The notes below the pieces were generated by a model. The model worked only from the letters and a program-made list of their open reading frames with translations, was not told the DNA's origin and did no database searches. This document shows positions 19,844 through 64,000 of a stretch of 64,000 nucleotides of DNA, in pieces. The DNA is from Anaeramoeba ignava BMAN (lineage: Eukaryota; Protista; Anaeramoebae), in the NCBI GenBank assembly GCA_028826165.1, contig JAPDFW010000130.1, positions 62,001 to 126,000 on the forward strand, given 5' to 3'. The stretch's first letter is position 1, and the number at the start of each line of letters is the position of its first letter. A program made the translations under genes and the position numbers.

Positions 19844-20740
19844 ATGTGTGAATTCTTCAGAAATTTCAAATCAGCAGATACTAATAAAGATGGTTTCCTT
19901 CAAGCAGAAGAAATTAAAACATTTTTCAAATTAGATGATGCAGCAGTTAAAGAAATCTTTGAGAAATTTGATGCAAACAAAGATGGAAAATTAAGTTATT
20001 ATGAATACATGGATTGGATTTTGAAAACAGAATTTGAGAAAGTTGATACAAACAAAGATGGAAAAATTCAACCAGAAGAATTAAAAGCATATTTCAAACT
20101 TAGTGATGAAATGTTAAAGGTAATTTTTGCAAAAGCCGATTTAAACAAAGATGGATTTTTGGAATATGATGAATATGCATTATGGAGAAAATTATACAAA
20201 CCAAGACAAGAATTTTTCGAAGCTGATTTGAATAAAGATGGATTCCTTCAACCAGATGAAGTTAAGAAATATCACGGATTGGAAGATGTTACTGGAGTTT
20301 ATGAGAAATATGATCTCAATAAGGATGGAAAACTTGATTTCAAAGAATATCTTAATTGGAGAATTGATGTTCTTCTTGATTATTTTTATCAAATTATTGA
20401 TACTGATCACGATGGAACTATTGAACCAGATGAACTCAAAGCTTATACTGGATTAGATGATGCTAAAATCAAACGTATTTTCGATGCTTATGATCATAAC
20501 AAAGATGATAGAATTGATTTCGCAGAATTTAGAAGAATGCAATTAGAAAAGTTGGTTAAACCAATGTTTGATAAAGCTGATAGTAATAAAGATGGTTTCC
20601 TTCAACCTGAAGAAATTAAAGCTTTTTTCAAACTTGATGATGCAGCAGTTAAGGAAGTTCTTGATAAATTTGATGAAAACAAAGATGGAAAACTTAATTT
20701 AAGTGAATATCTTAAATGGAGATTAAGTCAATTCAATTAA
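19844..20740 (+). CDS. 10x EF-hand calcium-binding protein, copy 2 (298 aa)
   Basis: Colinear paralog of copy 1 with ten EF loops. Confidence 0.95.
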   Translation: MCEFFRNFKSADTNKDGFLQAEEIKTFFKLDDAAVKEIFEKFDANKDGKLSYYEYMDWILKTEFEKVDTNKDGKIQPEELKAYFKLSDEMLKVIFAKADLNKDGFLEYDEYALWRKLYKPRQEFFEADLNKDGFLQPDEVKKYHGLEDVTGVYEKYDLNKDGKLDFKEYLNWRIDVLLDYFYQIIDTDHDGTIEPDELKAYTGLDDAKIKRIFDAYDHNKDDRIDFAEFRRMQLEKLVKPMFDKADSNKDGFLQPEEIKAFFKLDDAAVKEVLDKFDENKDGKLNLSEYLKWRLSQFN

Positions 20741-21762: not shown

Positions 21763-22671
21763 ATGTCTGAATACTTCAGAAATTTCAAATCAGCAGATAC
21801 TAATAAAGATGGATTCCTTCAAGCAGAAGAAATTAAAACATTTTTCAAATTAGATGATGCAGCAGTTAAAGAAATACTTGAGAAATTTGATGCAAACAAA
21901 GATGGAAAATTAAGTTATTATGAATACTTGAATTGGCTTATGAAAACAGAATTTGAGAAAGTTGACACAAACAAAGATGGAAAAATTCAACCAGAAGAAT
22001 TAAAAGCATATTTCAAACTTGATGATGAAACAGTTAAGGTAGTTTTTGAGAAAGCAGATTGGAATAAAGATGGAATTTTAGAACTTGATGAATATTCACA
22101 TTGGAGACATTTCCATAAATTGAAGGAAGAATTCAATGAAGCTGATTTAAACAAAGATGGATTCCTTCAACCAGATGAAGTTAAGAAATATCACGGATTG
22201 GAAGATGTTGCTGATATTTTTGAGAAATATGATGCTGATAAAGATGGAAAACTTGACCGTTTTGAATACATTCATTGGAGAATGGAAGTTGTTCTTAAAT
22301 ACTTCTTTGATATCATTGATACTAATAAAGATGGATTCCTTCAACCTGAAGAACTCAAAGCTTTTTATGGATTTGATGATGCTAAAATTAAAGAACTTTT
22401 TGATACTTATGATGTTGATAAAGATGGAAAACTTGATTTTACTGAATTTAAAACAATGAAAAAGGAAATGAAATCAAAGAAACTCTTTGACAAAGTTGAT
22501 ACTAATAAAGATGGATTTCTTCAACCTGAAGAATTGAAAGCTTTTTTCAAACTTGATGATGCTGCAATTAAAGAAATTTTTGATAAATTTGATGAAAACA
22601 AAGATGGAAAACTTGATTTGAAAGAATACATTAAATGGAGACGAAGCAGATTTGATTCAAAAAAGAAATGA
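21763..22671 (+). CDS. 10x EF-hand calcium-binding protein, copy 3 (302 aa)
   Basis: Colinear paralog with ten EF loops. Confidence 0.95.
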   Translation: MSEYFRNFKSADTNKDGFLQAEEIKTFFKLDDAAVKEILEKFDANKDGKLSYYEYLNWLMKTEFEKVDTNKDGKIQPEELKAYFKLDDETVKVVFEKADWNKDGILELDEYSHWRHFHKLKEEFNEADLNKDGFLQPDEVKKYHGLEDVADIFEKYDADKDGKLDRFEYIHWRMEVVLKYFFDIIDTNKDGFLQPEELKAFYGFDDAKIKELFDTYDVDKDGKLDFTEFKTMKKEMKSKKLFDKVDTNKDGFLQPEELKAFFKLDDAAIKEIFDKFDENKDGKLDLKEYIKWRRSRFDSKKK

Positions 22672-22752: not shown

Positions 22753-22939
22753 TTTTTTTGATTCATTTAATTTGAATCAATTTCCAAAACAATTTTAATG
22801 AATTCCATTTCAAACTTCATTTTAATTTCTTTTGTTTTTGTTTTTGTTTTGTTTTTGTTGTTTCTCTCTTTTTGGAAAATAAAAAATAAAATCATTTTTC
22901 ATTTTTCATTTTTCATTTTTCTTTTCTTTTCTTTTTGTT

Positions 22940-25900
22940 ATGACTTCAAAAGGTATTGTTCAAGCTTTTGAAACTTCAGATTCTTCAGCAATTCAACAAT
23001 TTTTTAAAAAAAATTCTGGAAAAATTAATGAAAAAGATGTAAAAATAAAAAATAAAAAATCAAAATAAAAATTAAAATTTAAAATTTAAAATTAAAATTC
23101 AAAAAAAAAAAAACACAAATAGGAACCTTTTGTAAATAAATCTTAATTTAAATCTATTATAGAAAACAAAATTTAAAAAAGATTTTTGTTTTTGTTTTTC
23201 AAATTTAATAGAAATTTACTCCTCTTCATTATGCTGTTAAATTTCATTGTACACCTCAAGTATTTTCAACACTTATTGATTTAAAAGCAAATCCAAATGA
23301 AACAAATGTTTGATTTATTTTATTATTTTTATTCAAAATTTATTTTATTATTTTATTATTTTATTTGTTAGTCTGTAAATAATTTTAAAAGAAAAATAAT
23401 ATAGTTTCTAAATAATTAAAATTTAATTAAAATTTAAGAGTGTAAATTTTTTTTTTAAATTTAATTTAATTTAATTTAATTTCCATATTTATTATATTGA
23501 TTAGGGAAATACCCCAATTATGTATTTGATGATGGAAAATCTTGATATTGATATTTTGAAAATCCTTCTTAAAGGAGATATTAACTTTAGTATCAAAAAT
23601 GTAAAAAAAAAAATTAATAAAAATAATTCAATCCAAAAAACAAAATTTAATTTCTTATCAAAAAAAAAAAAAAAAAAAGAATGTAAAACCCTTTTTTTTC
23701 CAATAGATTTATCATTTTAAAAAAAAAAAAGATTAAATCTTAATTTATATTTTTATTCCAAATTTCGAAAGTTTGATTATGATTATTTTGATTACATTTT
23801 CAAAATGGATTTAGAAGAAAAAGTTTTTGAATTATTTTTTGATGCAAGAACAAAAACAACTTTGGAAAATCAACCCGAATTTGTAAAATGATCCATTTTC
23901 TTTTCATTTTTACAATTAATATACATTAATCTTTTTCTTTTTTTTTTAATTTTGATTTTAATTTTAGGCTTCTTTATTAGAAAAAGCAATTAAACATGAA
24001 AGATCTGAATCAATTTTGGATTTAATTTATAAATCTCTTAAAAAACCTGCAAATGAATACAAATCTTATGTAAAAGAAAATTCATAAATATTTATATTTT
24101 TTTGGATTAATTGAAAAAATTTTTTGATTAGATTGTAAATTTTGTTTGTAATTTTTAATAATAATAATAATAATTTTATTATAATTTTATTAGGATAATA
24201 CTTTATTGCATTATGCTGTTCATTATAATGCTCCAATAAATTTCGTTAAAACTTTATTAAGTGGATTTGATCCAAATGTTCTTAATGTATAATAAAAAAA
24301 ATTAATCAAAAAAAAAAAGTATTGATTAATTTAATTTCTTTTTAGAATGTAAAAAATATTAAATTCAATAAGAAAATAATTTTAATTTTTAATCTTAATC
24401 TTTAATTTTTATAGTTGGTTTGTTTATTATTTTTTAAATAAAATATTCTTTTTGATCTAAAATTTATCATAATTTAGGATGAAACCCCTTTTCATTTTGC
24501 TGTTGCAAATGGAGCTTCACTTGAGCTTTTGAAATTGTTAATTGATGCTGGTGCTGATACTTCTCTTACAAATGTTAGAATTGGGAAAAAAAATAATTTA
24601 GGAAAGAATTTGTTTTAATATTTTTATTTTCTAATAGAAAGTAAAAAAAATTTAATTTAATTTAATTTAATTTAAATTCCAATTCTCTTATTAATTTTAT
24701 TTTGAATTTTTTTTTTAGGAAGTAATTTTTTTAAAATTAGTTTTAAAAGAAAATATCTTCTTTTAAAAATATTTTAATTAGGGTATTGGAGCAATAAGCT
24801 TTGCTATTCAAAACGATTCTGAAGAAATTGTTAAATTACTTTATGATTCAGGAACAGAAATTAAGATTGTAATGATCATTTTCAAATGTTTTCTTTTCTT
24901 TTGAAAAAAAAATATATAAATCTAATAAAACATTTTTAATAAATAAAGAGTGACCATGAATTTATTGATTTAATCGCAAAATCAAAAATTGAAATTATCA
25001 AATTATTACTTGAACATAAAGCGAATCCAAATGGAACAAGAGATGCTTGGGGAAAAGTAAACAAAAAAACAAAACAAAAAACAAAAAATATTTATATTTA
25101 TATTTATATTTTGATTATTTATAAAATTTTTAAAGCATCAATCACCTTTGACTCAAGCAATAACAAGAGGATATGATTTTGTAAAATTATTACTTGAAAA
25201 TGGAGCAGATCCAAATTTACCAGTAATTAATATAAAAAATATATTTATAAATAAATATTTAAAATATTAATATAAATAAAAGGTTGTAAATTTTGATTGA
25301 TATTAAATTTCTGTTTTTAGTTTCTTCTTTTTTTATATATAATTTAATTATATTGATATTTTATAAATTAAGGGAGAATCATTTGCAATACATCATGCAG
25401 CAACTTCTCGTAACAAAGATATAATTTCTTTACTTTTAATTCATGGAGCTAATTCAATGTCTTTGGATGTATTTCATAAAATTAATTAATCAAAAAAGGA
25501 ATAAAAATTTTTTTTTATTAATCAAAATGATAAATAAACTAGAATGTAAAATTTAAAAAAAGAGAAAGAGAAAGAAATTTAATTTTAATTTTTATTTTTA
25601 TTTTTATGTTATTAGAAAGTATTTTAAAATATTCCAAAAAAAAAACATTAAATTAATATTTCCTTTTTTAGGGAAATTCTCCGCTTTGTACTCTTTTAGA
25701 AAATCCTTATGAAATTGTTGGAGCTCTTGAAGTGCTTCTTGATTCAGGTGTTGATGTGAATCATATTAATGTAATATATATATATATATATATATAATAT
25801 AAATAATATTTTTCTATTAGTTGGAAATTAATTGGAACATTTTATATTCTTCTTTTTTACTTTTTATTTTTAATTAGAATTCTGTAAAATATTTTGATTT

Positions 25901-26820
25901 TAAAAGGAAATTTCCCAAAAGAAAATTAAGTAAATTCTTTTCTTTGTTTTTTAGGGAAAAAAACCTTTAGGTATTTTTCTATCAAGAGTACAAAGGAATA
26001 TGTCACCTTCTCAAATGCAAGTTTTACATCATTTACTTAGTTATGGTGCAGATCCAGAAGATTTAACAGTATAATTTTAATTACAATTTTAATTTTCAAA
26101 ACGAATTTTAAATTAAAAATGAAACTGTTTTTGTTTTTTTAGGATTTTTTAAATTATGAACCAATTAAACAAATTTATGATAAAATCACAGCACTTCCAA
26201 AATCTATTATGGGTATTTATGAAAGAAAAGAAGGATGCGATATTGAATTCCCATTTTTCGAAAAACAATATAATCTTCATAAACAATTTTTATATGCAAG
26301 AATTGGCAAAGATTTGACAGATAATTTAAAAGCAATTTTAACTGAGTTTTCTGAGAAACAAGTGGCAACTTTTATTGCATGGATTTATGGCAAATGTTTA
26401 CCATCAGAAAACTATCAAGAAATGAAAGAAATGATGGTTCAATTAGGAATAAATGATTTTTATCTTCATACTGGAGCAAAAGGAGTAGGAGAAGCATTTG
26501 CCAAAATGTATGAAGATAAAGATTCAATGGATTTCACAATCATTGTTGATGGTAAAGAAATTCTTGCTCATAAAATTATCTTGATGGCTAGAAGTGATTT
26601 ATATCGAGGAATGTTTGTCAGTGTTCAGGATGATTCGAATAAAGTTAATGATTACAGTGGAAAATCTTTTGAAGCTGTTAATTCTGTTGTTAAGTTTCTT
26701 TATACTAATTTGCTTGATGAAAAATTATCAAATAAAGTTATTCAAGAATTATCTGATGCTGAAGATTATTACCAAATAATTAATTCAAATTTAAAAGAAC
26801 AACTTCCAAAAAAAAAATAA
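22940..26820 (+). CDS. Ankyrin-repeat + BTB/POZ protein, 27 exons, ~669 aa, all introns phase 0
   Basis: Exons: 22940-23038, 23123-23131, 23212-23307, 23372-23374, 23439-23441, 23505-23600, 23680-23682, 23772-23882, 23968-24069, 24132-24134, 24194-24286, 24346-24348, 24415-24417, 24478-24573, 24638-24640, 24719-24721, 24782-24868, 24949-25056, 25136-25222, 25283-25285, 25373-25468, 25543-25545, 25616-25618, 25672-25770, 25878-25883, 25955-26068, 26143-26820. Ankyrin exons include KFTPLHYAVKF..., DETPFHFAVANGASLELLKLLIDAGAD and HQSPLTQAITRGYDFVKLLLENGADPN. The C-terminal BTB reads SMDFTIIVDGKEILAHKIILMARSDLYRGMF. All introns are GT..AG, 53-107 nt. Confidence 0.88.
23123..25883 (+). other. Set of 13 microexons (eleven 3-nt, one 6-nt, one 9-nt) in ankyrin beta-hairpins
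   Basis: AG|exon|GT units: GAACCTTTT 23123, TCT 23372, AGT 23439, AAT 23680, ATT 24132, AAT 24346, TTG 24415, AAA 24638, GAA 24719, GTT 25283, AAT 25543, AAA 25616, AATTCT 25878. Including them restores the ankyrin hairpin spacing in most repeats. Confidence 0.82.
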
Positions 26821-26973: not shown

Positions 26974-27876
26974 TCATTTTTTTTCTTGGCAACTATGAGC
27001 CCATTTAATATATTCTTTCAAATCAAGTTTTCCATCTTTGTTTTCATCAAATTTATCAAAAATTTCTTTAACTACAGCATCATCAAGTTTGAAAAAGGCT
27101 TTCAATTCTTCAGGTTGAAGAAATCCATCTTTATTAGTATCTGCTTTGTCAAACACTTTCTTTGCTTGTAATTCCTTTTTCATTGCTTTGTATTCATCAA
27201 AATCAAGTTTTCCATCTTTATTAACATCATAAACATCAAAAAGTTCTTTAATTTTAGCATCATCAAATCCAGTGAAAGCTTTCATTTCTTCAGGTTGAAG
27301 GAATCCATCTTTATTAGTATCAATGATATCAAAGAAGTATTTAAGAAGTTCATCCATTCTCCAAATAGCATATTCTTTGAAATCAAGTTTTCCATCCTTA
27401 TCAGCATCATATTTCTCAAAAATACCAGTAACATCTTCCAATCCGTGATATTTCTTAACTTCATCTGGTTGAAGGAATCCATCTTTATTCAAATCAGCTT
27501 CATTGAATTCTTCCTTCAATTTATGGAAATGTCTCCAATGTGAATATTCATCAATTTCCAAAACTCCATCTTTATTCCAATCTGCTTTTGCAAAAATTGC
27601 TTTAACTGTTTCATCATCAAGTTTGAAATATGCTTTTAATTCTTCTGGTTGAATTTTTCCATCTTTGTTTGTATCAACTTTCTCAAATTCTGTTTTCAAA
27701 AGCCAATTAGAATATTCATAAAAACCCAATTTTCCATCTTTGTTTGCATCAAATTTCTCAAGTATTTCTTTAACTGCTGCATCATCTAATTTGAAAAATG
27801 TTTTAATTTCTTCTGCTTGAAGGAATCCATCTTTATTAGTATCTGCTGATTTGAAATTTCTGAAAAATTCACACAT
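26974..27876 (-). CDS. 10x EF-hand calcium-binding protein, copy 4 (300 aa), inverted
   Basis: Highly similar to copy 3, including ~115 bp of 5' flank. Confidence 0.95.
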   Translation of the reverse strand: MCEFFRNFKSADTNKDGFLQAEEIKTFFKLDDAAVKEILEKFDANKDGKLGFYEYSNWLLKTEFEKVDTNKDGKIQPEELKAYFKLDDETVKAIFAKADWNKDGVLEIDEYSHWRHFHKLKEEFNEADLNKDGFLQPDEVKKYHGLEDVTGIFEKYDADKDGKLDFKEYAIWRMDELLKYFFDIIDTNKDGFLQPEEMKAFTGFDDAKIKELFDVYDVNKDGKLDFDEYKAMKKELQAKKVFDKADTNKDGFLQPEELKAFFKLDDAVVKEIFDKFDENKDGKLDLKEYIKWAHSCQEKK

Positions 27877-29087: not shown

Positions 29088-31157
29088 ATGCTCACAGAGG
29101 ATTATTGGGAAGATCTGCTTAATGTTGATGAAGATAGAGATTCTAGTCAATATCTAGTTGAGTTACGTCAATTATTTCAATCCAAAAACAAAACCATTTT
29201 TGTTCCAAATGATTCCCAATCAAAAAGATTCACAAATCATGATTATTTTAACACAGAAAAAGTTGATAATAAAGATGAACCCAAATCAAATCAATTTATC
29301 TCAGAAATTGAATTAACTGAAGAAAATGAAGAGATTGAATTAACTCAAGAAAATGAAGAGATTGAATTAACTGAAGAAAATGAAGAAACTCAAGAAATTC
29401 AATTCAGAAACAAAACCATTTTTGTTCCAAATGATTCCCAATCAAAAAGATTCACAAATCATGATTATTTTAACACAGAAAAAGTTGATAATAAAGATGA
29501 ACCCAAATCAAATCAATTTATCTCAGAGATTGAATTAACTGAAGAAAATGAAGAGATTGAATTAACTCAAGAAAATGAAGAGATTGAATTAACTGAAGAA
29601 AATGAAGAGATTGAATTAACTCAAGAAACTGAAGAGATTGAATTAACTGAAGAAAATGAAGAAACTCAAGAAATTCAATTCAGAAACAAAAACATTTTTG
29701 TTCCAAATGATTCTCAATCAAAAAGATTCACAAATCATGATTATTTTAACACAGAAAAAGTTGGTAATAAAGATGAACCCAAATCAAATCAATTTATCTC
29801 AGAAATTGAATTAACTCAAGAAAATCAAGAGATTGAATTAACTGAAGAAAATGAAGAGATTGAATTAACTCAAGAAATTGAAGAGATTGAATTAACTGAA
29901 GAAACTGAAGAAACTCAAGAAATTCAATTCAGAAACAAAACCATTTTTGTTCCAAATGATTCCCAATCAAAAAGATTCACAAATCATGATTATTTTAACA
30001 CAGAAAAAGTTGGTAATAAAGATGAACCCAAATCAAATCAATTTATCTCAGAGATTGAATTAACTGAAGAAAATGAAGAGATTGAATTAACTCAAGAAAA
30101 TGAAGAGATTGAATTAACTGAAGAAATTGAAGAGATTGAATTAACTGAAGAAACTGAAGAAACTCAAGAAATTCAATTCAGAAACAAAACCATTTTTGTT
30201 CCAAATGATTCCCAATCAAAAAGATTCACAAATCATGATTATTTTAACACAGAAAAAGTTGGTAATAAAGATGAACCCAAATCAAATCAATTTATCTCAG
30301 AGATTGAATTAACTGAAGAAAATGAAGAAACTCAAGAAATTCAATTCAGAAACAAAACCATTTTTGTTCCAAATGATTCTCAATCAAAAAGATTCACAAA
30401 TCATGACTATTTTAACACAGAAAAAGTTGATAATAAAGGTCTTTTTGGCGATTCTGATTTAGTTAGTGTAATTGATGTCAAACAAGTTCCAAATCCAAAT
30501 CAAGTTCCAAATCCAAATCGAAAAGTTTCAAATCCAAATCAAGTTTCAAATCCAAATCGAAAAGTTCCAAATCTAAATCAAGTTTCAAATCCAAATCGAA
30601 AAGTTCCAAATCTAAATCAAGTTCCAAATCCAAATCGAAAAGTTTCAAATCCAAATCAAGTTCCAAATCTAAATCGAAAAGTTCCAAATCCAAATCAAGT
30701 TACAAATCTAAATCGAAAAGTTACAAATCCAAAAAGACAAAATCCAAGAAACCAAAATATAAAAAAAAGAACCAAAAGAAAAGTTCAACCTGTAACAAAC
30801 AAAACTGGAAAAAGGATCAAAAACAGAAAAACTGGAAAAAGAAACGGAAAAAGAATTGGATTCCAACTTGACCAATTATGTGGGAAATATCCTCAATTTT
30901 TTGATGGATGGAAACCAAATACATTTCAAAATTTCAAAAAATATGGGGAAGTTCCTGATCAAGTTTGCTTCAAAAATGAAGTTATTAATCTTTTAATAAC
31001 AAACTCAAAACGTTCTAATTTGAGAAACAAAAGGAGATATGTTATAAAAATTCTTGAAGAGAAAATGGGGTTGAAAAATAAACACCCTTATATTCATGGA
31101 AAAATTATCAGAGTTAAAGAAATCAAAAATCAAAATTCAAATTCAAATCAAATCTAA
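29088..31157 (+). CDS. Hypothetical protein with nested tandem repeats and a basic C-terminal domain (689 aa, intronless)
   Basis: Uninterrupted ORF. Six NKTIFVPNDSQSKRFTNHDYFNTEKV units with variable EIELTEENE subrepeats, then VPNPNQ/VSNPNRK repeats and a K/R-rich C-terminus. Confidence 0.75.
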   Translation: MLTEDYWEDLLNVDEDRDSSQYLVELRQLFQSKNKTIFVPNDSQSKRFTNHDYFNTEKVDNKDEPKSNQFISEIELTEENEEIELTQENEEIELTEENEETQEIQFRNKTIFVPNDSQSKRFTNHDYFNTEKVDNKDEPKSNQFISEIELTEENEEIELTQENEEIELTEENEEIELTQETEEIELTEENEETQEIQFRNKNIFVPNDSQSKRFTNHDYFNTEKVGNKDEPKSNQFISEIELTQENQEIELTEENEEIELTQEIEEIELTEETEETQEIQFRNKTIFVPNDSQSKRFTNHDYFNTEKVGNKDEPKSNQFISEIELTEENEEIELTQENEEIELTEEIEEIELTEETEETQEIQFRNKTIFVPNDSQSKRFTNHDYFNTEKVGNKDEPKSNQFISEIELTEENEETQEIQFRNKTIFVPNDSQSKRFTNHDYFNTEKVDNKGLFGDSDLVSVIDVKQVPNPNQVPNPNRKVSNPNQVSNPNRKVPNLNQVSNPNRKVPNLNQVPNPNRKVSNPNQVPNLNRKVPNPNQVTNLNRKVTNPKRQNPRNQNIKKRTKRKVQPVTNKTGKRIKNRKTGKRNGKRIGFQLDQLCGKYPQFFDGWKPNTFQNFKKYGEVPDQVCFKNEVINLLITNSKRSNLRNKRRYVIKILEEKMGLKNKHPYIHGKIIRVKEIKNQNSNSNQI

Positions 31158-53200: not shown

Positions 53201-56200
53201 AAATGATTGATAAGCAGTAGCTGCCGAAGATAATTGATTTTTGTTTTCTGTGTAAAGAAATAAAGATCCCAGAAGATTAAGAATGCTTTGAAAAGTATTA
53301 AAATCTGTTGAATGCTTATTGAGTTTGAGTTTTTCTTGTTTTTTGAGGAGATCCGAACCAGATCTTTTGTGCTTGGTTTTATTTTTTGCTTCGAAATTTC
53401 CTGAGTTTGTTCTTGTAATTTTCCGATGAGTTTTTGAAGTTTCTTTTGGATTTTGATCTTCATTCAAGTTTAAATCGAGATTTCTATTTATTTTTTGGTT
53501 TTGATTTTTGAGGTTTTCTTTTTGATTTTGAATATGTAATTTGATCCATGCTTGCGACATAATAAATCCATAAGATTCAGCAAATTTTGAGTTTACAGTT
53601 GAAGCATTTTCATTTGAAAAATATTTTAAAAGAATTTTGTGTAAATCATTCGGAATAATAGATTGGGAGATTGAAGAGAAAGAGCAAATGAGCTCAGCAA
53701 ATGCAATTTTGATTTCATCTGAAGTTTCATTTGAGAAATTTTTAATTGCTTTAAAAACTATTTAAAAAAATTTATAAATTTATAAATTTTAAAAATATTA
53801 AAAATATAAAATTATTTGATTTTATTTTTTACCATCATTTTCATAAACAAATAAACTTTGATAAGTTTTTATTAAATTAGAAATTGTTTTTAAAGATTTA
53901 ATTCTAATAAATTCCTGTAAAATTTAAATTGAAAAGAATTATTATTTAAAATTTTTTTTTTAATCGATAAAAAAAAGTTGAATTTAATACTTTTGGAGAT
54001 TTTAGATGTTTAAGAGTTAATATAACAGTATCTGATAATAAATTCAAAGTTTTTTTTGGGAATTGAGAATGTAATTCATTAAGAATTTCAATTGAAAGAC
54101 TTTTTAAAAAACAAGAAATTAATATTAATTTTAATATTTTTAATAAAATTAATTTTAATATTTTTAATAAAATTAATTTTAATATTTTTAATAAAATAAA
54201 TTTTAATATTTTTAATAAAATTAATTTTAATATTTTTAATAAAATAAATTTTAATATTTTTAATAAAATTAATTTTAATAATTTTAATATAAATTAATTT
54301 TAATATTTTTAATAAATTAATTTTAATATTTTTAATAAAATTAATTTTAATATTTTTAATAAAATTAATTTTAATATTTTTAATAAAATTAATTTTAATA
54401 TTTTTAATAAAATAAATTTTAATATTTTTAATAAAAATTAATTTTAATATTTTTAATATAATTAATTTTAATATTTTTAATATAATTAATTTTATTATTT
54501 TTAATATAATTAATTTTAATATTTTTAATAAAATTAATTTTAATATTTTTAATATAAATTAATTTTAATATTTTTAATATAAATTAATTTTAATATTTTT
54601 AATATAAATTAATTTTAATATTTTTAATATAATAAATTTTAATATTTTTAATATAATAAATTTTAATATTTTTAATAAAATTAATTTTAATATTTTTAAT
54701 ATAATTTAATTTTAATATTTTTAATATAAATTAATTTTAATATTTTTAATATAATAAATTTTTAATATTTTTAATAAAATTAATTTTAATATTTTTAATA
54801 AAAATTAATTTTAATATTTTTATATAAATTAATTTTAATATTTTTAATAAAATAAATTTTAATATTTTTAATAAAAATAAATTTTAATATTTTTAATAAA
54901 ATAAATTTTAATATTTTTAATAAATTTAATTTTAATATTTTTAATAAAATTAATTTTAATATTTTTAATAAAAATAATTTTAATATTTTTAATAAAATTA
55001 ATTTTAATATTTTTAATATAAATTAATTTTAATATTTTTAATAAAATTAATTTTAATATTTTTAATATAAATTAATTTTAATATTTTTAATATAATTAAT
55101 TTTAATATTTTTAATATAAATTAATTTTAATATTTTTAATAAATTTAATTTTAATATTTTTAATATAATTAATTTTAATATTTTTAATAAAAATAAATTT
55201 TAATATTTTTAATAAAAATTAATTTTAATATTTTTAATATAATTAATTTTAATATTTTTAATATAATTAATTTTATTATTTTTAATATAATTAATTTTAA
55301 TATTTTTAATATAAATTAATTTTAATATTTTTAATATAAATAAATTTTAATATTTTTAATATAAATTAATTTTAATATTTTTAATATAAATTAATTTTAA
55401 TATTTTTAATATAATAAATTTTAATATTTTTAATAAAATTAATTTTAATATTTTTAATATAATTAATTTTAATATTTTTAATATAATTAATTTTAATATT
55501 TTTAATAAAAATAAATTTTAATATTTTTAATATAAATAAATTTTTAATATTTTTAATAAAATTAATTTTAATATTTTTAATAAAATTAATTTTAATATTT
55601 TTATATAAATTAATTTTAATATTTTTAATAAAATAAATTTTAATATTTTTAATAAAATAAATTTTAATATTTTTAATAAAATAAATTTTAATATTTTTAA
55701 TAAAATAAATTTTAATATTTTTAATAAATTTAATTTTAATATTTTTAATAAAATTAATTTTAATATTTTTATATAAATTAATTTTAATATTTTTAATAAA
55801 ATTAATTTTAATATTTTTAATAAATTTTATTATTAATTTTTCAGATTAATTTTAATATTTTTAATAAAATTAATTTTAATATTTTTAATAAAATTAATTT
55901 TAATATTTTTAATAAAATTAATTTTAATATTTTTAATAAAAATTAATTTTAATATTTTTTTTAATAAAATTATTTTTAATATTTTTAATAAAATTAATTT
56001 TTAATATTTTTAATAAAATTAATTTTAATATTTTTAATAAAATTAATTTTAATATTTTTAATAAAATTAATTTTAATATTTTTAATAAAATTAATTTTAA
56101 TATTTTTAATAAAATTAATTTTAATATTTTTAATAAAATTAATTTTAATATTTTTAATAAAATTAATTTTAATATTTTTAATAAAATTAATTTTAATATT

Positions 56201-61905: not shown

Positions 61906-62360
61906 ATGAATTTATTTAAAACTAAATCGAAATGTGAAATGTTTGTTGTTTTTGATGAACAACAAAAACGTCAAAAAATAACAAAAACATTTAGACAAAA
62001 AGAAAAACAACTTCTAATTTATACAACTGGAGAAACTGTTTCAGGAAATTTGAAAATTGAAATTAAAGATAATTCAAAAATTGATTTTGAACAGATAACA
62101 ATTGAATTTCTTGGTCAAATACGTATAAATGTCAATAATTTTTTTTTAAAAAGAAAAATTTTTTTCAATTTTTTTCATTTTTTTTTCATTTTTTTTTCAT
62201 TTTTAAAAGTTATTGTTGGTTATGATAGTTATATATTTACTCAATTATCAAGGCAATTAGAACAAAAAGGTTCTTTATCACAATCTAAAACTTGGGAATT
62301 TTCTTTTCCAAAAGTTGAAAAACAATTTGAGTCTTATTATGGAAGAATTGTTACATTAAG
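61906..62360 (+). CDS. VPS26: Retromer subunit VPS26, first exons (gene continues beyond the window)
   Basis: Exons 61906-62122 and 62210-62360. Reads YTTGETVSG...IEFLGQI and FSFPKVEKQFESYYGRIVTLR, followed by a GT donor at 62361. Confidence 0.88.
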
Positions 62361-62374
62361 GTTTTTATCACAGA

Positions 62375-64000
62375 ATTATTTATAAAATTATTTATAAAAT
62401 TATTTATAAAATTATTTATAAAATTATTTATAAAATTATTTATAAAATTATTTATAAAATTAATTATAAAATTATTTATTAAATTATTTATTAAATTATT
62501 TATAAAATTAATTATAAAATTATTTATTAAATTATTTATAAAATTATTTATAAAATTATTTATAAAATTATTTATAAAATTATTTTTATAAAATTAATTA
62601 TAAAATTATTAATAAAATTATTTATAAAATTATTTATTAAATTATTTATTTATAAAATTAAATATAAAATTATTTATAAAATTATTTATAAAATTATTTT
62701 ATAAAATTATTTATAAAATTATTTATAAAATTATATATAAAATTATTTATAAAATTATTTATAAAATTATTTATAAAATTATTTATAAAATTAAATATAA
62801 AATTATTTATAAAATTATTTATAAAATTATTTATAAAATTATTTATTAAATTATTTATTTATTTTATAAAATTATTTATAAAATTATTTATAAAATTATT
62901 TATAAAATTATTTATAAAATTATTTATAAAATTATTTATAAAATTATTTATAAAATTATTTATAAAATTATTTATAAAATTATTTATAAAATTATTTATA
63001 AAATTATTTATAAAATTATTTATAAAATTATTTATAAATTATTTATAAAATTATTTATAAAATTAATTATAAAATTATTTATAAAATTATTTTATAAAAT
63101 TATTTATAAAATTAAATATAAAATTATTTATAAAATTATTTATTTAAATTATTTATAAAATTATTTATTAAATTATTTATAAAATTATTTATTAAATTAT
63201 TTATAAAATTATTTATAAAATTATTTATAAAATTATTTATAAAATTATTTATAAAATTATTAATAAAATTATTTTATAAAATTATTTATAAAATTATTTA
63301 TAAAATTAAATATAAAATTAAATATAAAATTAAATATAAAATTATTTATAAAATTATTTATAAAATTATTTATAAAATTATTTATAAAATTATTTATAAA
63401 ATTATTTATAAAATTAATTATAAAATTATTTATTAAATTATTTATTAAAATTATTTATTAAATTGATTATAAAATTATTTATAAATTTATTTATAAAATT
63501 GATTATAAAATTAATTATAAAATTATATATAAAATTAAATATTAAAATTAATTATAAAATTAAATATAAAATTAAATATTAAATTTTATAAAATTAATTA
63601 TAAAATTAAATATAAAATTAATTATAAAATTAATTATAAAATTAATTATAAAATTATTTATAAAATTATTTATAAAATTATTTATAAAATTATTTATAAA
63701 ATTATTTATAAAATTAATTATAAAATTATTTATAAAATTATTTATAAAATTATTTATAAAATTAAATATAAAATTAATTATAAAATTAAATATAAAATTA
63801 TTTATAAAATTAAATATAAAATTATTTATAAAATTAATTATAAAATTATTTATAAAATTATTTATAAAATTATTTTATAAAATTATTTATAAAATTATTT
63901 ATTAAATTATTTATAAAATTATTTATTAAATTATTTATAAAATTATTTATTAAATTATTTATAAAATTATTTATAAAATTATTTATAAAATTATTTATAA
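62375..64000. repeat. 12-bp tandem repeat (TTATAAAATTAT)n in a VPS26 intron
   Basis: Starts ~15 nt after the donor and runs to the end of the window. Confidence 0.9.

What the first reader, a model, noticed from the sequence alone, without database searches (positions are those of the whole stretch)
22940..26068. Ankyrin hypervariable hairpin residues encoded by single-codon (3-nt) microexons: candidate splicing-based receptor diversification system
Seen in sequence: between ankyrin-body exons lie AG|NNN|GT units spaced by normal-sized introns. The 3-nt exons are TCT 23372, AGT 23439, AAT 23680, ATT 24132, AAT 24346, TTG 24415, AAA 24638, GAA 24719, GTT 25283, AAT 25543 and AAA 25616, plus AATTCT 25878 and GAACCTTTT 23123. 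Splicing them in restores the D/N-x-x-G-x-T/S-P hairpin spacing: N|S|S|GNTP, N|N|L|DETP, N|K|E|GIGA, D|N|K|GNSP and N|NS|GKKP. In two repeats with only one microexon, the second residue sits in the neighbouring exon (SY|I|DNTL, N|N|FDYDY). Two junctions fit less exactly (D|EPF|KFTP, P|V|GESFA). The model also turns ~125-210-nt gaps into 53-107-nt introns. Established: these x-x positions are target-contacting variable residues, among those randomised in DARPin libraries, and BTB proteins commonly act as Cullin3 substrate adaptors. Inference: each specificity residue is an independently skippable, frame-neutral module (2^13 theoretical combinations), or an independently evolving cassette. I know of no description of this architecture but could not search the literature.
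Basis: partly seen in the sequence, partly recalled or inferred. Interest (0 to 1): 0.96.

Follow-up and report, generated by a model that had tools for sequence, protein, structure and literature searches.

The report
Single-codon exons in ankyrin hairpins
This Anaeramoeba ignava ankyrin-BTB gene carries real three-base exons, each encoding one loop residue, which the public annotation skips; a sister gene's mRNA contains all 14 of its own, so they look routinely spliced rather than a diversity generator.

Summary
All 13 AG|exon|GT units (11 of 3 nt, one of 6, one of 9) lie where stated.

- **Non-random:** AG-N3-GTAA occurs 10 times in the region, against 0-2 for every other spacing.
- **Organism:** the genome is Anaeramoeba ignava. 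The GenBank model KAJ5067301.1 omits every 3-nt exon, leaving ankyrin hairpins two residues short (5 instead of the 7 seen in intronless paralogs).
- **Same layout in paralogs:** P0122's gene has it in 3 of 3 gaps, and other paralog loci in 15 of 18.
- **Decisive evidence, from a paralog only:** transcriptome ORF P0390 differs from annotated KAJ5078051.1 only by seven 2-residue insertions. These equal, in order, the 14 genomic AG-NNN-GT triplets.
- **Stop codons** are depleted in such triplets (1 of 138, against about 10% of intronic triplets).

So the 3-nt exons are real. All 14 sit in the one assembled transcript, which argues for mostly constitutive inclusion. Combinatorial "receptor diversification" is untested and disfavoured.

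I found no published description. First-stage notes of this scan flagged the same architecture on other pieces of this genome. Genome-wide, TAG-N3-GTAAA is 4-7 times more frequent than at the neighbouring spacings.

The parts
22940..26820 (+). Ankyrin-BTB gene (GenBank KAJ5067301.1 / M0811_13079, Anaeramoeba ignava). This model has 27 exons and 26 phase-0 introns.
22940..23038 (+). Body exon 1 (99 nt), ends ...INEKD.
23123..23131 (+). 9-nt microexon GAACCTTTT (EPF). It is absent from the GenBank model.
23212..23307 (+). Ankyrin body exon 2 (96 nt), KFTPLH...NETN
23372..23374 (+). 3-nt exon TCT (S)
23439..23441 (+). 3-nt exon AGT (S)
23505..23600 (+). Ankyrin body exon 3 (96 nt), GNTPIM...SIKN
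23680..23682 (+). 3-nt exon AAT (N)
23772..23882 (+). Body exon 4 (111 nt)
23968..24069 (+). Body exon 5 (102 nt)
24132..24134 (+). 3-nt exon ATT (I), donor GTAAAT. GenBank instead uses a 12-nt exon at 24132-24143 (IVNF, donor GTTTGT). Which is right is unresolved.
24194..24286 (+). Ankyrin body exon 6 (93 nt), DNTLLH...VLN
24346..24348 (+). 3-nt exon AAT (N)
24415..24417 (+). 3-nt exon TTG (L), donor GTTTGT
24478..24573 (+). Ankyrin body exon 7 (96 nt), DETPFH...LTN
24638..24640 (+). 3-nt exon AAA (K)
24719..24721 (+). 3-nt exon GAA (E)
24782..24868 (+). Ankyrin body exon 8 (87 nt)
24949..25056 (+). Body exon 9 (108 nt)
25136..25222 (+). Ankyrin body exon 10 (87 nt)
25283..25285 (+). 3-nt exon GTT (V)
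25373..25468 (+). Ankyrin body exon 11 (96 nt), GESFAI...SLD
25543..25545 (+). 3-nt exon AAT (N)
25616..25618 (+). 3-nt exon AAA (K)
25672..25770 (+). Ankyrin body exon 12 (99 nt), GNSPLC...HIN
25878..25883 (+). 6-nt microexon AATTCT (NS). It is the only unit kept unchanged in the GenBank model; 24132 is kept only within GenBank's 12-nt exon.
25955..26068 (+). Ankyrin body exon 13 (114 nt)
26143..26820 (+). Last exon (225 codons plus stop). Pfam BTB matches residues 121-213, preceded by a degenerate first BTB-like half.

Best explanation
The gene is an Anaeramoeba ignava ankyrin-BTB protein. Each ankyrin repeat is encoded by a body exon of about 96 nt, running from the G of G-x-TPLH to the D/N that opens the next beta-turn. 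The two turn residues (repeat positions 2 and 3) are each encoded by a separate 3-nt exon, flanked by ordinary introns of this species (about 55-105 nt).

The 3-nt exons are spliced into the mRNA as a rule, and this restores the canonical hairpin. The public annotation missed them because gene finders and short-read aligners cannot place 3-nt exons.

Inferred steps:
- An acceptor and a donor only 3 nt apart cannot both be occupied at once, so the flanking introns must be removed one after another, by intron definition. This resembles recursive splicing, except that 3 nt are kept each time.
- The near-consensus GTAA donors at the microexons probably help their recognition.
- The layout is old. 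It is shared by paralogs whose introns no longer resemble one another, and it is probably inherited through repeat and gene duplication.
- The 6-nt and 9-nt exons, and the hairpins with a single microexon, look like products of later intron loss.
- The protein itself probably works as a Cul3-type substrate adaptor.
For: **Target gene**
- Spacing-specific enrichment: 10 AG-N3-GTAA against 0-2 for other spacings.
- With the units, introns are 53-107 nt. Gaps without any unit are 74-85 nt.
- Hairpin linkers go from 5 to 7 residues, and 7 is the spacing in intronless paralogs.
- GenBank protein P0123 (KAJ5067301.1) joins the body exons directly and omits all the 3-nt exons.

**Same layout in paralogs**
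- P0122's gene has exactly two units in 3 of 3 hairpin gaps.
- In 16 more BTB-exon loci, AG-N3-GTA occurs 144 times on the gene strand, against 6-50 at other spacings (the 50 at spacing 11 is mostly one tandem repeat in L024) and 18 on the opposite strand.
- 15 of 18 gaps between canonical ankyrin exons hold exactly two units, with a median intron of 69 nt.
- Annotated family proteins are either all-5 or all-7 in hairpin spacing: 81 hairpins against 85.

**Transcript proof in a paralog**
- Transcriptome ORF P0390 (512 aa) equals annotated P0153 (498 aa) plus EF, ND, IR, DA, RG, NN and KS at seven hairpins.
- Genomic locus L028 has GAA/TTT, AAT/GAT, ATT/AGA, GAT/GCT, AGA/GGA, AAT/AAT and AAA/TCT as AG-NNN-GT units in exactly those seven gaps. 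The two gaps without extra residues have none.
- The transcriptome and the genome come from the same strain or a near-identical one: P0003 maps at 100% identity over 1845 aa.

**Coding signal**
- Only 1 stop codon in 138 unit triplets, against 10.2% of intronic triplets (P = 6e-6).
- Residues encoded by the microexons (K, N, D, S, E) match linker positions 4-5 of intronless paralogs.
- GTAA donors: 80% and 73% at the microexons, against 37% at body exons.

**Age of the layout**
- Introns within one hairpin are no more alike than unrelated introns.
Against: - There is no RNA evidence for the target gene itself.
- The target's protein cluster holds only the GenBank model.
- Constitutive inclusion rests on one assembled transcript of a paralog. 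Minor skipped isoforms would not be seen there.
- Three target junctions do not give the canonical spacing: EPF gives 8 residues, V gives 5, and ATT competes with GenBank's 12-nt exon.
- The sequential splicing order and the role of the strong donors are inference only.
Confidence: 0.85

Rival explanations
1. One reading: each 3-nt exon is an independently skippable, frame-neutral cassette. Each ankyrin-BTB gene would then yield many binding-surface variants, making a splicing-based receptor or adaptor diversification system.
For: - All the microexons are multiples of 3 nt and in phase 0 in this gene, so skipping any of them keeps the reading frame.
- They encode the ankyrin positions that usually contact targets (my own knowledge).
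- Schistosoma micro-exon genes set a precedent for variation through symmetric microexons.
- The family is large.
Against: - The only transcript available for a family member includes 14 of 14 microexons.
- Microexon donors are closer to the consensus than body-exon donors, which suggests efficient use.
- Skipping would give hairpins shorter than in any intronless paralog.
- 3-nt exons also occur in phase 1 and in low-complexity tails of unrelated genes. The architecture is therefore a property of the genome, not a device specific to these proteins.
Confidence: 0.1
2. The AG-NNN-GT units in this particular gene are unused relics, for example of duplicated introns. On this view the mRNA joins the body exons directly, as in GenBank model KAJ5067301.1.
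For: The GenBank annotation does this. No transcript of this gene was available.
Against: - The GenBank model of the paralog is wrong at all seven of its hairpins when compared with its transcript.
- Unused sites would decay, yet all 13 units here have intact AG and GT flanks, none is a stop codon, and most restore the canonical spacing.
Confidence: 0.04
3. The units are recursive-splicing ratchet sites that help remove long introns stepwise. On this view the 3 nt are not kept in the mRNA.
For: An acceptor and a donor lie next to each other, as at recursive sites.
Against: - The true recursive form, AG directly followed by GTAA, occurs 0 times in the region.
- The gaps are only 124-208 nt, so no stepwise removal would be needed.
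- The paralog's transcript keeps the triplets.
Confidence: 0.01

Closest known systems
Schistosoma micro-exon genes (MEGs)
   Same: They have runs of very short symmetric exons, in multiples of 3 and down to 3 bp according to bioRxiv 10.1101/2023.06.21.545858. Skipping such an exon therefore keeps the reading frame.
   Different: MEG exons are mostly longer, with introns up to 5 kb. They encode small secreted proteins, and their variation through alternative splicing is documented (from my own knowledge, not checked in that preprint). Here the exons are 3 nt with introns of about 70 nt. They sit at fixed structural positions of a folded intracellular repeat domain, and the one transcript available includes all of them.
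Ultra-short microexons of plants and animals that annotation misses (PMC8831610, PMC7821500)
   Same: They are exons of 15 nt or less that encode residues inside conserved domains. Gene finders and RNA-seq aligners miss them systematically.
   Different: Those are mostly isolated exons between long introns. Here two 3-nt exons recur at every repeat of a gene, and the genome has thousands of candidate sites, with arrays of more than 60 in a row.
Recursive splicing (zero-length exons)
   Same: A 3' and a 5' splice site sit almost on top of each other, so the two introns must be removed one after the other (inference).
   Different: Here three nucleotides stay in the mRNA at each step. No AG directly followed by GTAA occurs in the region.
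Introner elements (PMC9860276)
   Same: Elsewhere in this genome, near-identical intron-like units of about 72-90 nt occur in many copies.
   Different: Those copies are tandem and separated by exactly 3 nt, not dispersed. In the target gene and its ankyrin paralogs, the introns show no similarity above background.
Ankyrin plus double-BTB proteins (ABTB1/BPOZ type) and BTB Cul3 adaptors (KLHL22, KBTBD4, SPOP)
   Same: Ankyrin repeats are followed by a tandem BTB module. The BTB domain is closest to solved Cul3 adaptors, and cullin genes are present.
   Different: BTB identity is low (E-values from 1e-7 to 1e-3). Cul3 binding was not tested. The ABTB1 comparison is from memory.

Membership tests
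Spliceosomal microexon (3 nt) | AG immediately upstream and GT immediately downstream | tested here: met
   All 13 units have these flanks.
Spliceosomal microexon (3 nt) | Flanking introns of normal size for the species | tested here: met
   Introns are 53-107 nt with the units. Unit-free introns of the same gene are 74-85 nt, and the paralog median is 69 nt.
Spliceosomal microexon (3 nt) | The exon sequence is present in mature mRNA of the target gene | not testable with these tools
There is no transcript-derived protein in the target's cluster.
Spliceosomal microexon (3 nt) | The exon sequence is present in mature mRNA of a family member | tested here: met
   Transcript ORF P0390 carries the residues of all 14 genomic triplets of locus L028, in order.
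Spliceosomal microexon (3 nt) | The triplets behave as codons | tested here: met
   There is 1 stop in 138 triplets, against 10.2% in intronic triplets. The residue composition matches linker positions 4-5 of intronless paralogs.
Ankyrin repeat protein | Pfam ankyrin families match, and the hairpin has the canonical GAD.N-(7 residues)-TPLH spacing | tested here: met
   Precomputed Pfam ankyrin families are listed for P0123. The spacing is 7 only when the microexons are included.
BTB Cul3 substrate adaptor | BTB/POZ domain | tested here: met
   PF00651, E = 1.1e-12. The nearest solved structures are KLHL22, KBTBD4 and SPOP.
BTB Cul3 substrate adaptor | Binds Cullin-3 | not tested
   Only the presence of cullin genes in the genome was shown.
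Splicing-based diversification system (MEG-like) | Exon lengths are multiples of 3, so skipping keeps the frame | tested here: met
   Exons are 3, 6 or 9 nt, all in phase 0.
Splicing-based diversification system (MEG-like) | Several isoforms that differ in microexon content | tested here: inconclusive
   Only one full-length transcript of a paralog was available, and it includes all 14 microexons. No read-level data were available.
Recursive splice site | AG directly followed by GT, with no nucleotides kept | tested here: not met
   There are 0 AG-GTAA sites in the region, and the triplets are kept in the paralog's mRNA.
Introner-derived introns | The introns belong to a family of near-identical copies | tested here: not met
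   Intron similarity within a hairpin equals the background (P = 0.22 and 0.61). The feature is met only by other arrays in the genome.

The most novel reading that the evidence does not exclude
Inclusion of the single-codon exons is regulated or stochastic in vivo. Each ankyrin-BTB gene would then produce a set of adaptors with different beta-turn lengths and residues. In addition, the genome may actively propagate 'intron plus 3 nt' units, building coding sequence one codon at a time, as suggested by arrays of at least 64 (and at least 73) consecutive 3-nt exons separated by related or near-identical introns.
Probability: 0.12. Interest if true: 0.92.

Novelty: new variant of a known kind. 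Interest (0 to 1): 0.8.

Why it matters
**Annotation.** The public A. ignava annotation appears systematically wrong for this family. About half of the annotated ankyrin hairpins lack two residues. It is probably wrong for other genes as well, and similar errors may exist in other AT-rich protist genomes.

**Splicing mechanism.** Pairs of 3-nt exons between introns of about 70 nt are shown to be in mRNA for a paralog. Candidate arrays of dozens of such exons also exist. These are an extreme case for splice-site recognition: the whole exon lies inside the stretch that pairs with U1 and U5 (my own knowledge). This organism is therefore a natural system for studying ordered splicing by intron definition.

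**Intron evolution.** Three introns at consecutive codon boundaries have been kept across old paralogs. Alongside them are young tandem arrays of near-identical introns spaced by 3 nt. Together they make intron gain, intron loss and duplication of intron-plus-codon units directly testable.

Tried and rejected
**Reads**
- Afterwards I sent no DNA letters of 22893-22947 to any search tool; window references started at 22948 or later.
- The database protein P0123, whose first three residues are encoded at 22940-22947, was used by id only.

**Joined model**
- A joined spliced model of the target was built only inside local scripts, for length counts.

**Searches that gave nothing useful**
- The look-up of sequencing runs listed one run of unknown kind and no RNA run.
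- The look-up of encoding contigs found nothing for the neighbouring EF-hand protein or for P0196 and P0162, probably because records of the window's own genome are left out. I therefore could not check A. flamelloides for the same architecture.
- The homolog search with the BTB exon was limited by its length window (2 hits). The search with P0123 was swamped by generic ankyrin proteins.
- The BEACH transcript P0003 maps to an intronless gene. It showed that transcriptome and genome are the same or a near-identical strain, but it could not test microexons.

**Ideas rejected**
- Recent tandem duplication as the origin of the three introns of a hairpin, because they show no similarity above background.
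- A ciliate-type genetic code or eliminated germline sequences, because neighbouring ORFs of 300-2350 aa read through with the standard code.
Full report
**What is in the sequence**

The window is a eukaryotic sequence of about 20% G+C read with the standard genetic code. It holds long intronless ORFs, including EF-hand and BEACH proteins.

On the + strand, 22940-26820 is a gene of 13 ankyrin-type body exons (87-114 nt) and a 678-nt last exon with a BTB domain. All coordinates are correct.

**Is it more than chance?**

Yes.
- In 22940-26068, AG-N3-GTAA occurs 10 times. Every other spacing from 0 to 15 gives 0-2, and the whole minus strand of the window has 3.
- With the units, the gene has 26 introns of 53-107 nt. 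Without them, the gaps that hold units are 124-208 nt, whereas the four gaps without units are 74-85 nt.

**Organism and existing annotation**

- The protein P0122, 'ankyrin repeat-containing protein [Anaeramoeba ignava]', maps at 100% identity to the window's genome (42.8 Mb, 147 contigs).
- The transcriptome protein P0003 maps at 100% identity over 1845 aa.
- The genome paper reports 80.65% A+T overall and 91.86% A+T in introns (PMC11550330). [quoted passage not shown]
- The GenBank product of the target gene is KAJ5067301.1 (P0123, 659 aa). All the other microexons are missing.

**Does the protein need the extra residues?**

- Intronless paralogs of the same genome (L006, L009) have 7 residues between the GAD.N-type end of helix 2 and the TPLH motif.
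- The target's direct joins give 5. With two microexons, five hairpins give exactly 7 (S-S, N-L, K-E, N-K, and N-S from the 6-nt exon).
- Across annotated family members the spacing is bimodal: 5 in 81 hairpins and 7 in 85. Each protein is essentially all-5 or all-7.

**Reproducibility in paralogs**

- In P0122's gene, each of the three annotated hairpin 'introns' contains exactly two AG-NNN-GT units: K/G, D/I and K/T.
- In 16 further loci with a separate BTB exon, AG-N3-GTA occurs 144 times on the gene strand. Other spacings give 6-50, where the 50 at spacing 11 is mostly one tandem repeat in L024. The opposite strand has 18.
- 15 of 18 gaps between canonical ankyrin exons, most of them 96 nt, hold exactly two units. 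This gives introns with a median of 69 nt.

**Transcript-level proof, in a paralog**

The 90%-identity cluster of annotated KAJ5078051.1 (P0153, 498 aa) also holds a TransDecoder ORF from the EukProt A. ignava transcriptome (P0390, 512 aa).
- The two proteins are identical except for seven 2-residue insertions at the ankyrin hairpins: EF, ND, IR, DA, RG, NN and KS.
- In the genome (L028), those seven gaps each contain exactly two AG-NNN-GT units, with codons GAA/TTT, AAT/GAT, ATT/AGA, GAT/GCT, AGA/GGA, AAT/AAT and AAA/TCT. These are the 14 extra residues, in order.
- The two gaps without extra residues (71 and 82 nt) contain no unit.

So 3-nt exons are spliced into mRNA in this family, and the annotation is wrong at every such hairpin of this paralog.

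**Further coding signals**

- Unit triplets contain 1 stop codon in 138, against 10.2% of intronic triplets (P = 6e-6).
- The residues they encode (K, N, D, S, E) match linker positions 4-5 of intronless paralogs. The flanking body-exon residues (N/D/T before, G after) match positions 3 and 6.

**How it probably works**

This part is inference.
- Introns here are short, so splice sites are probably paired across the intron.
- An acceptor and a donor 3 nt apart cannot both be engaged at once. The three introns of a hairpin must therefore be removed one after another, as in recursive splicing but with 3 nt kept each time.
- Microexon donors are nearer to the consensus (GTAA in 80% and 73%) than body-exon donors (37%), which may secure their recognition.
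- The architecture is old. Introns within a hairpin are no more alike than unrelated introns, yet paralogs with only 35-43% identity in the BTB exon share the layout. Duplication of whole repeat units (exon, intron, codon, intron, codon, intron) and of whole genes is the simplest route.
- The 6-nt and 9-nt exons and the hairpins with a single microexon look like later intron losses.

**The diversification hypothesis**

Nothing supports it so far. The one available transcript has 14 of 14 microexons. With independent inclusion at 0.5 per exon, a fully included isoform would be about 6e-5 of molecules. Recovering it as the assembled form implies high inclusion per exon. This is an inference, and assembly bias cannot be excluded.

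3-nt exons also occur in phase 1 in TLDc-like genes and in long arrays in unrelated genes. The feature therefore belongs to the genome and is not specific to binding loops. Minor skipping cannot be excluded.

**Genome scale**

TAG-Nk-GTAAA counts are 645 for k=2, 2597 for k=3 and 361 for k=4. That is an excess of roughly 2,000 strict-consensus sites. Only about half of the target's units fit this strict pattern, so several thousand 3-nt exons are plausible. This is an estimate.

**Literature**

The three Anaeramoeba papers I read contain no 'microexon'. No paper in the library combines Anaeramoeba with microexon or introner, and none uses 'tandem' or 'consecutive microexons'. The closest precedents are Schistosoma micro-exon genes and the ultra-short microexons missed by annotation in plants and animals.

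First-stage notes of this scan flagged the same architecture on other pieces of this genome. Those notes were leads only. The tests above are my own.

**Limits**

- There is no RNA evidence for the target gene itself. 
- The joined spliced model was built only in local scripts and was not searched or folded.
- A. flamelloides could not be examined.
- The choice between ATT and the 12-nt exon at 24132 remains open, as does the exact reading of the EPF and V junctions.

**Verdict**

The microexon architecture is real, with confidence about 0.85 for the target, and proven for a paralog. Inclusion is probably constitutive. The diversification idea is unproven and disfavoured, at about 0.1. This is a new variant of a known kind, of high interest for splicing, intron evolution and annotation.

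Noticed in passing
L029 (G000:C137:608500-618499), array from about 1021 onwards; it extends to about C137:622488: A protein-kinase gene is followed by at least 64 consecutive AG-NNN-GTA units spaced 71-80 nt apart, with related introns. The triplets read in phase 0 give a D/S/E/N/H-rich acidic tail with no stop codon. This is a candidate C-terminal region encoded one codon per exon.
   Followed up: partly
L030 (G000:C87:270000-279999), minus strand: 73 consecutive AG-NNN-GTA units are spaced 83-92 nt apart. The phase-0 reading has no stop codon but is strongly hydrophobic (I/F/L/A-rich). Its gene context was not examined.
   Followed up: partly
L001 (G000:C1:408000-414500), minus strand: A BTB plus coiled-coil gene ends in an array of about 45 units. 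Near-identical intron-like units of about 75 nt (GTAAATAATTAAAT...AATAAATAG) are separated by variable triplets. Some units have decayed donors, and a (TTA)n expansion interrupts the array. Variation is concentrated in the 3 nt, which simple tandem duplication does not easily explain.
   Followed up: partly
L002 (G000:C1:1057000-1059500) and L003 (G000:C1:941500-943500), minus strand: Two TLDc-like paralogs carry 16 and 7 consecutive 3-nt exons between the conserved GP.FG and DI.L motifs. The upstream exon ends in phase 1, so each 3-nt exon spans two codons. The reading is rich in Y, D and N (for example RDYLDYYY).
   Followed up: partly
window 24132-24143: GenBank uses a 12-nt exon (IVNF, donor GTTTGT) where the 3-nt exon ATT with donor GTAAAT is the alternative. 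The 3-nt choice gives the canonical hairpin spacing if Y of the previous exon counts as turn position 4.
   Followed up: partly
L004 (G000:C69:409154-412870) 395-860, and L005: The third intron of one hairpin in P0122's gene is inflated to more than 500 nt by a minisatellite (units like ATTTTGAAATGA). L005 is a 95%-identical inverted copy of the whole locus with stop codons in its BTB exon, so it is probably a pseudogene.
   Followed up: partly
window 19844-20740 (+), 21763-22671 (+), 26974-27876 (-): Three intronless paralogous EF-hand proteins of about 300 aa, with nine EF-hand matches, flank the ankyrin-BTB gene.
   Followed up: partly
window 29088-31157 (+): A 689-aa ORF is built of roughly 83-aa (249-nt) tandem repeats, followed by a PNxNQV/RKV repeat and a basic tail. 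It has only weak Pfam DUF hits.
   Followed up: no
L006 and L009, opposite strands: Intronless ankyrin-BTB paralogs each have an RCC1-like gene with the same tandem BTB module lying next to them on the opposite strand.
   Followed up: no
window 54001-56000 and 62001-64000: These stretches have 1.3% and 4.1% G+C, which is extreme A+T simple sequence.
   Followed up: no
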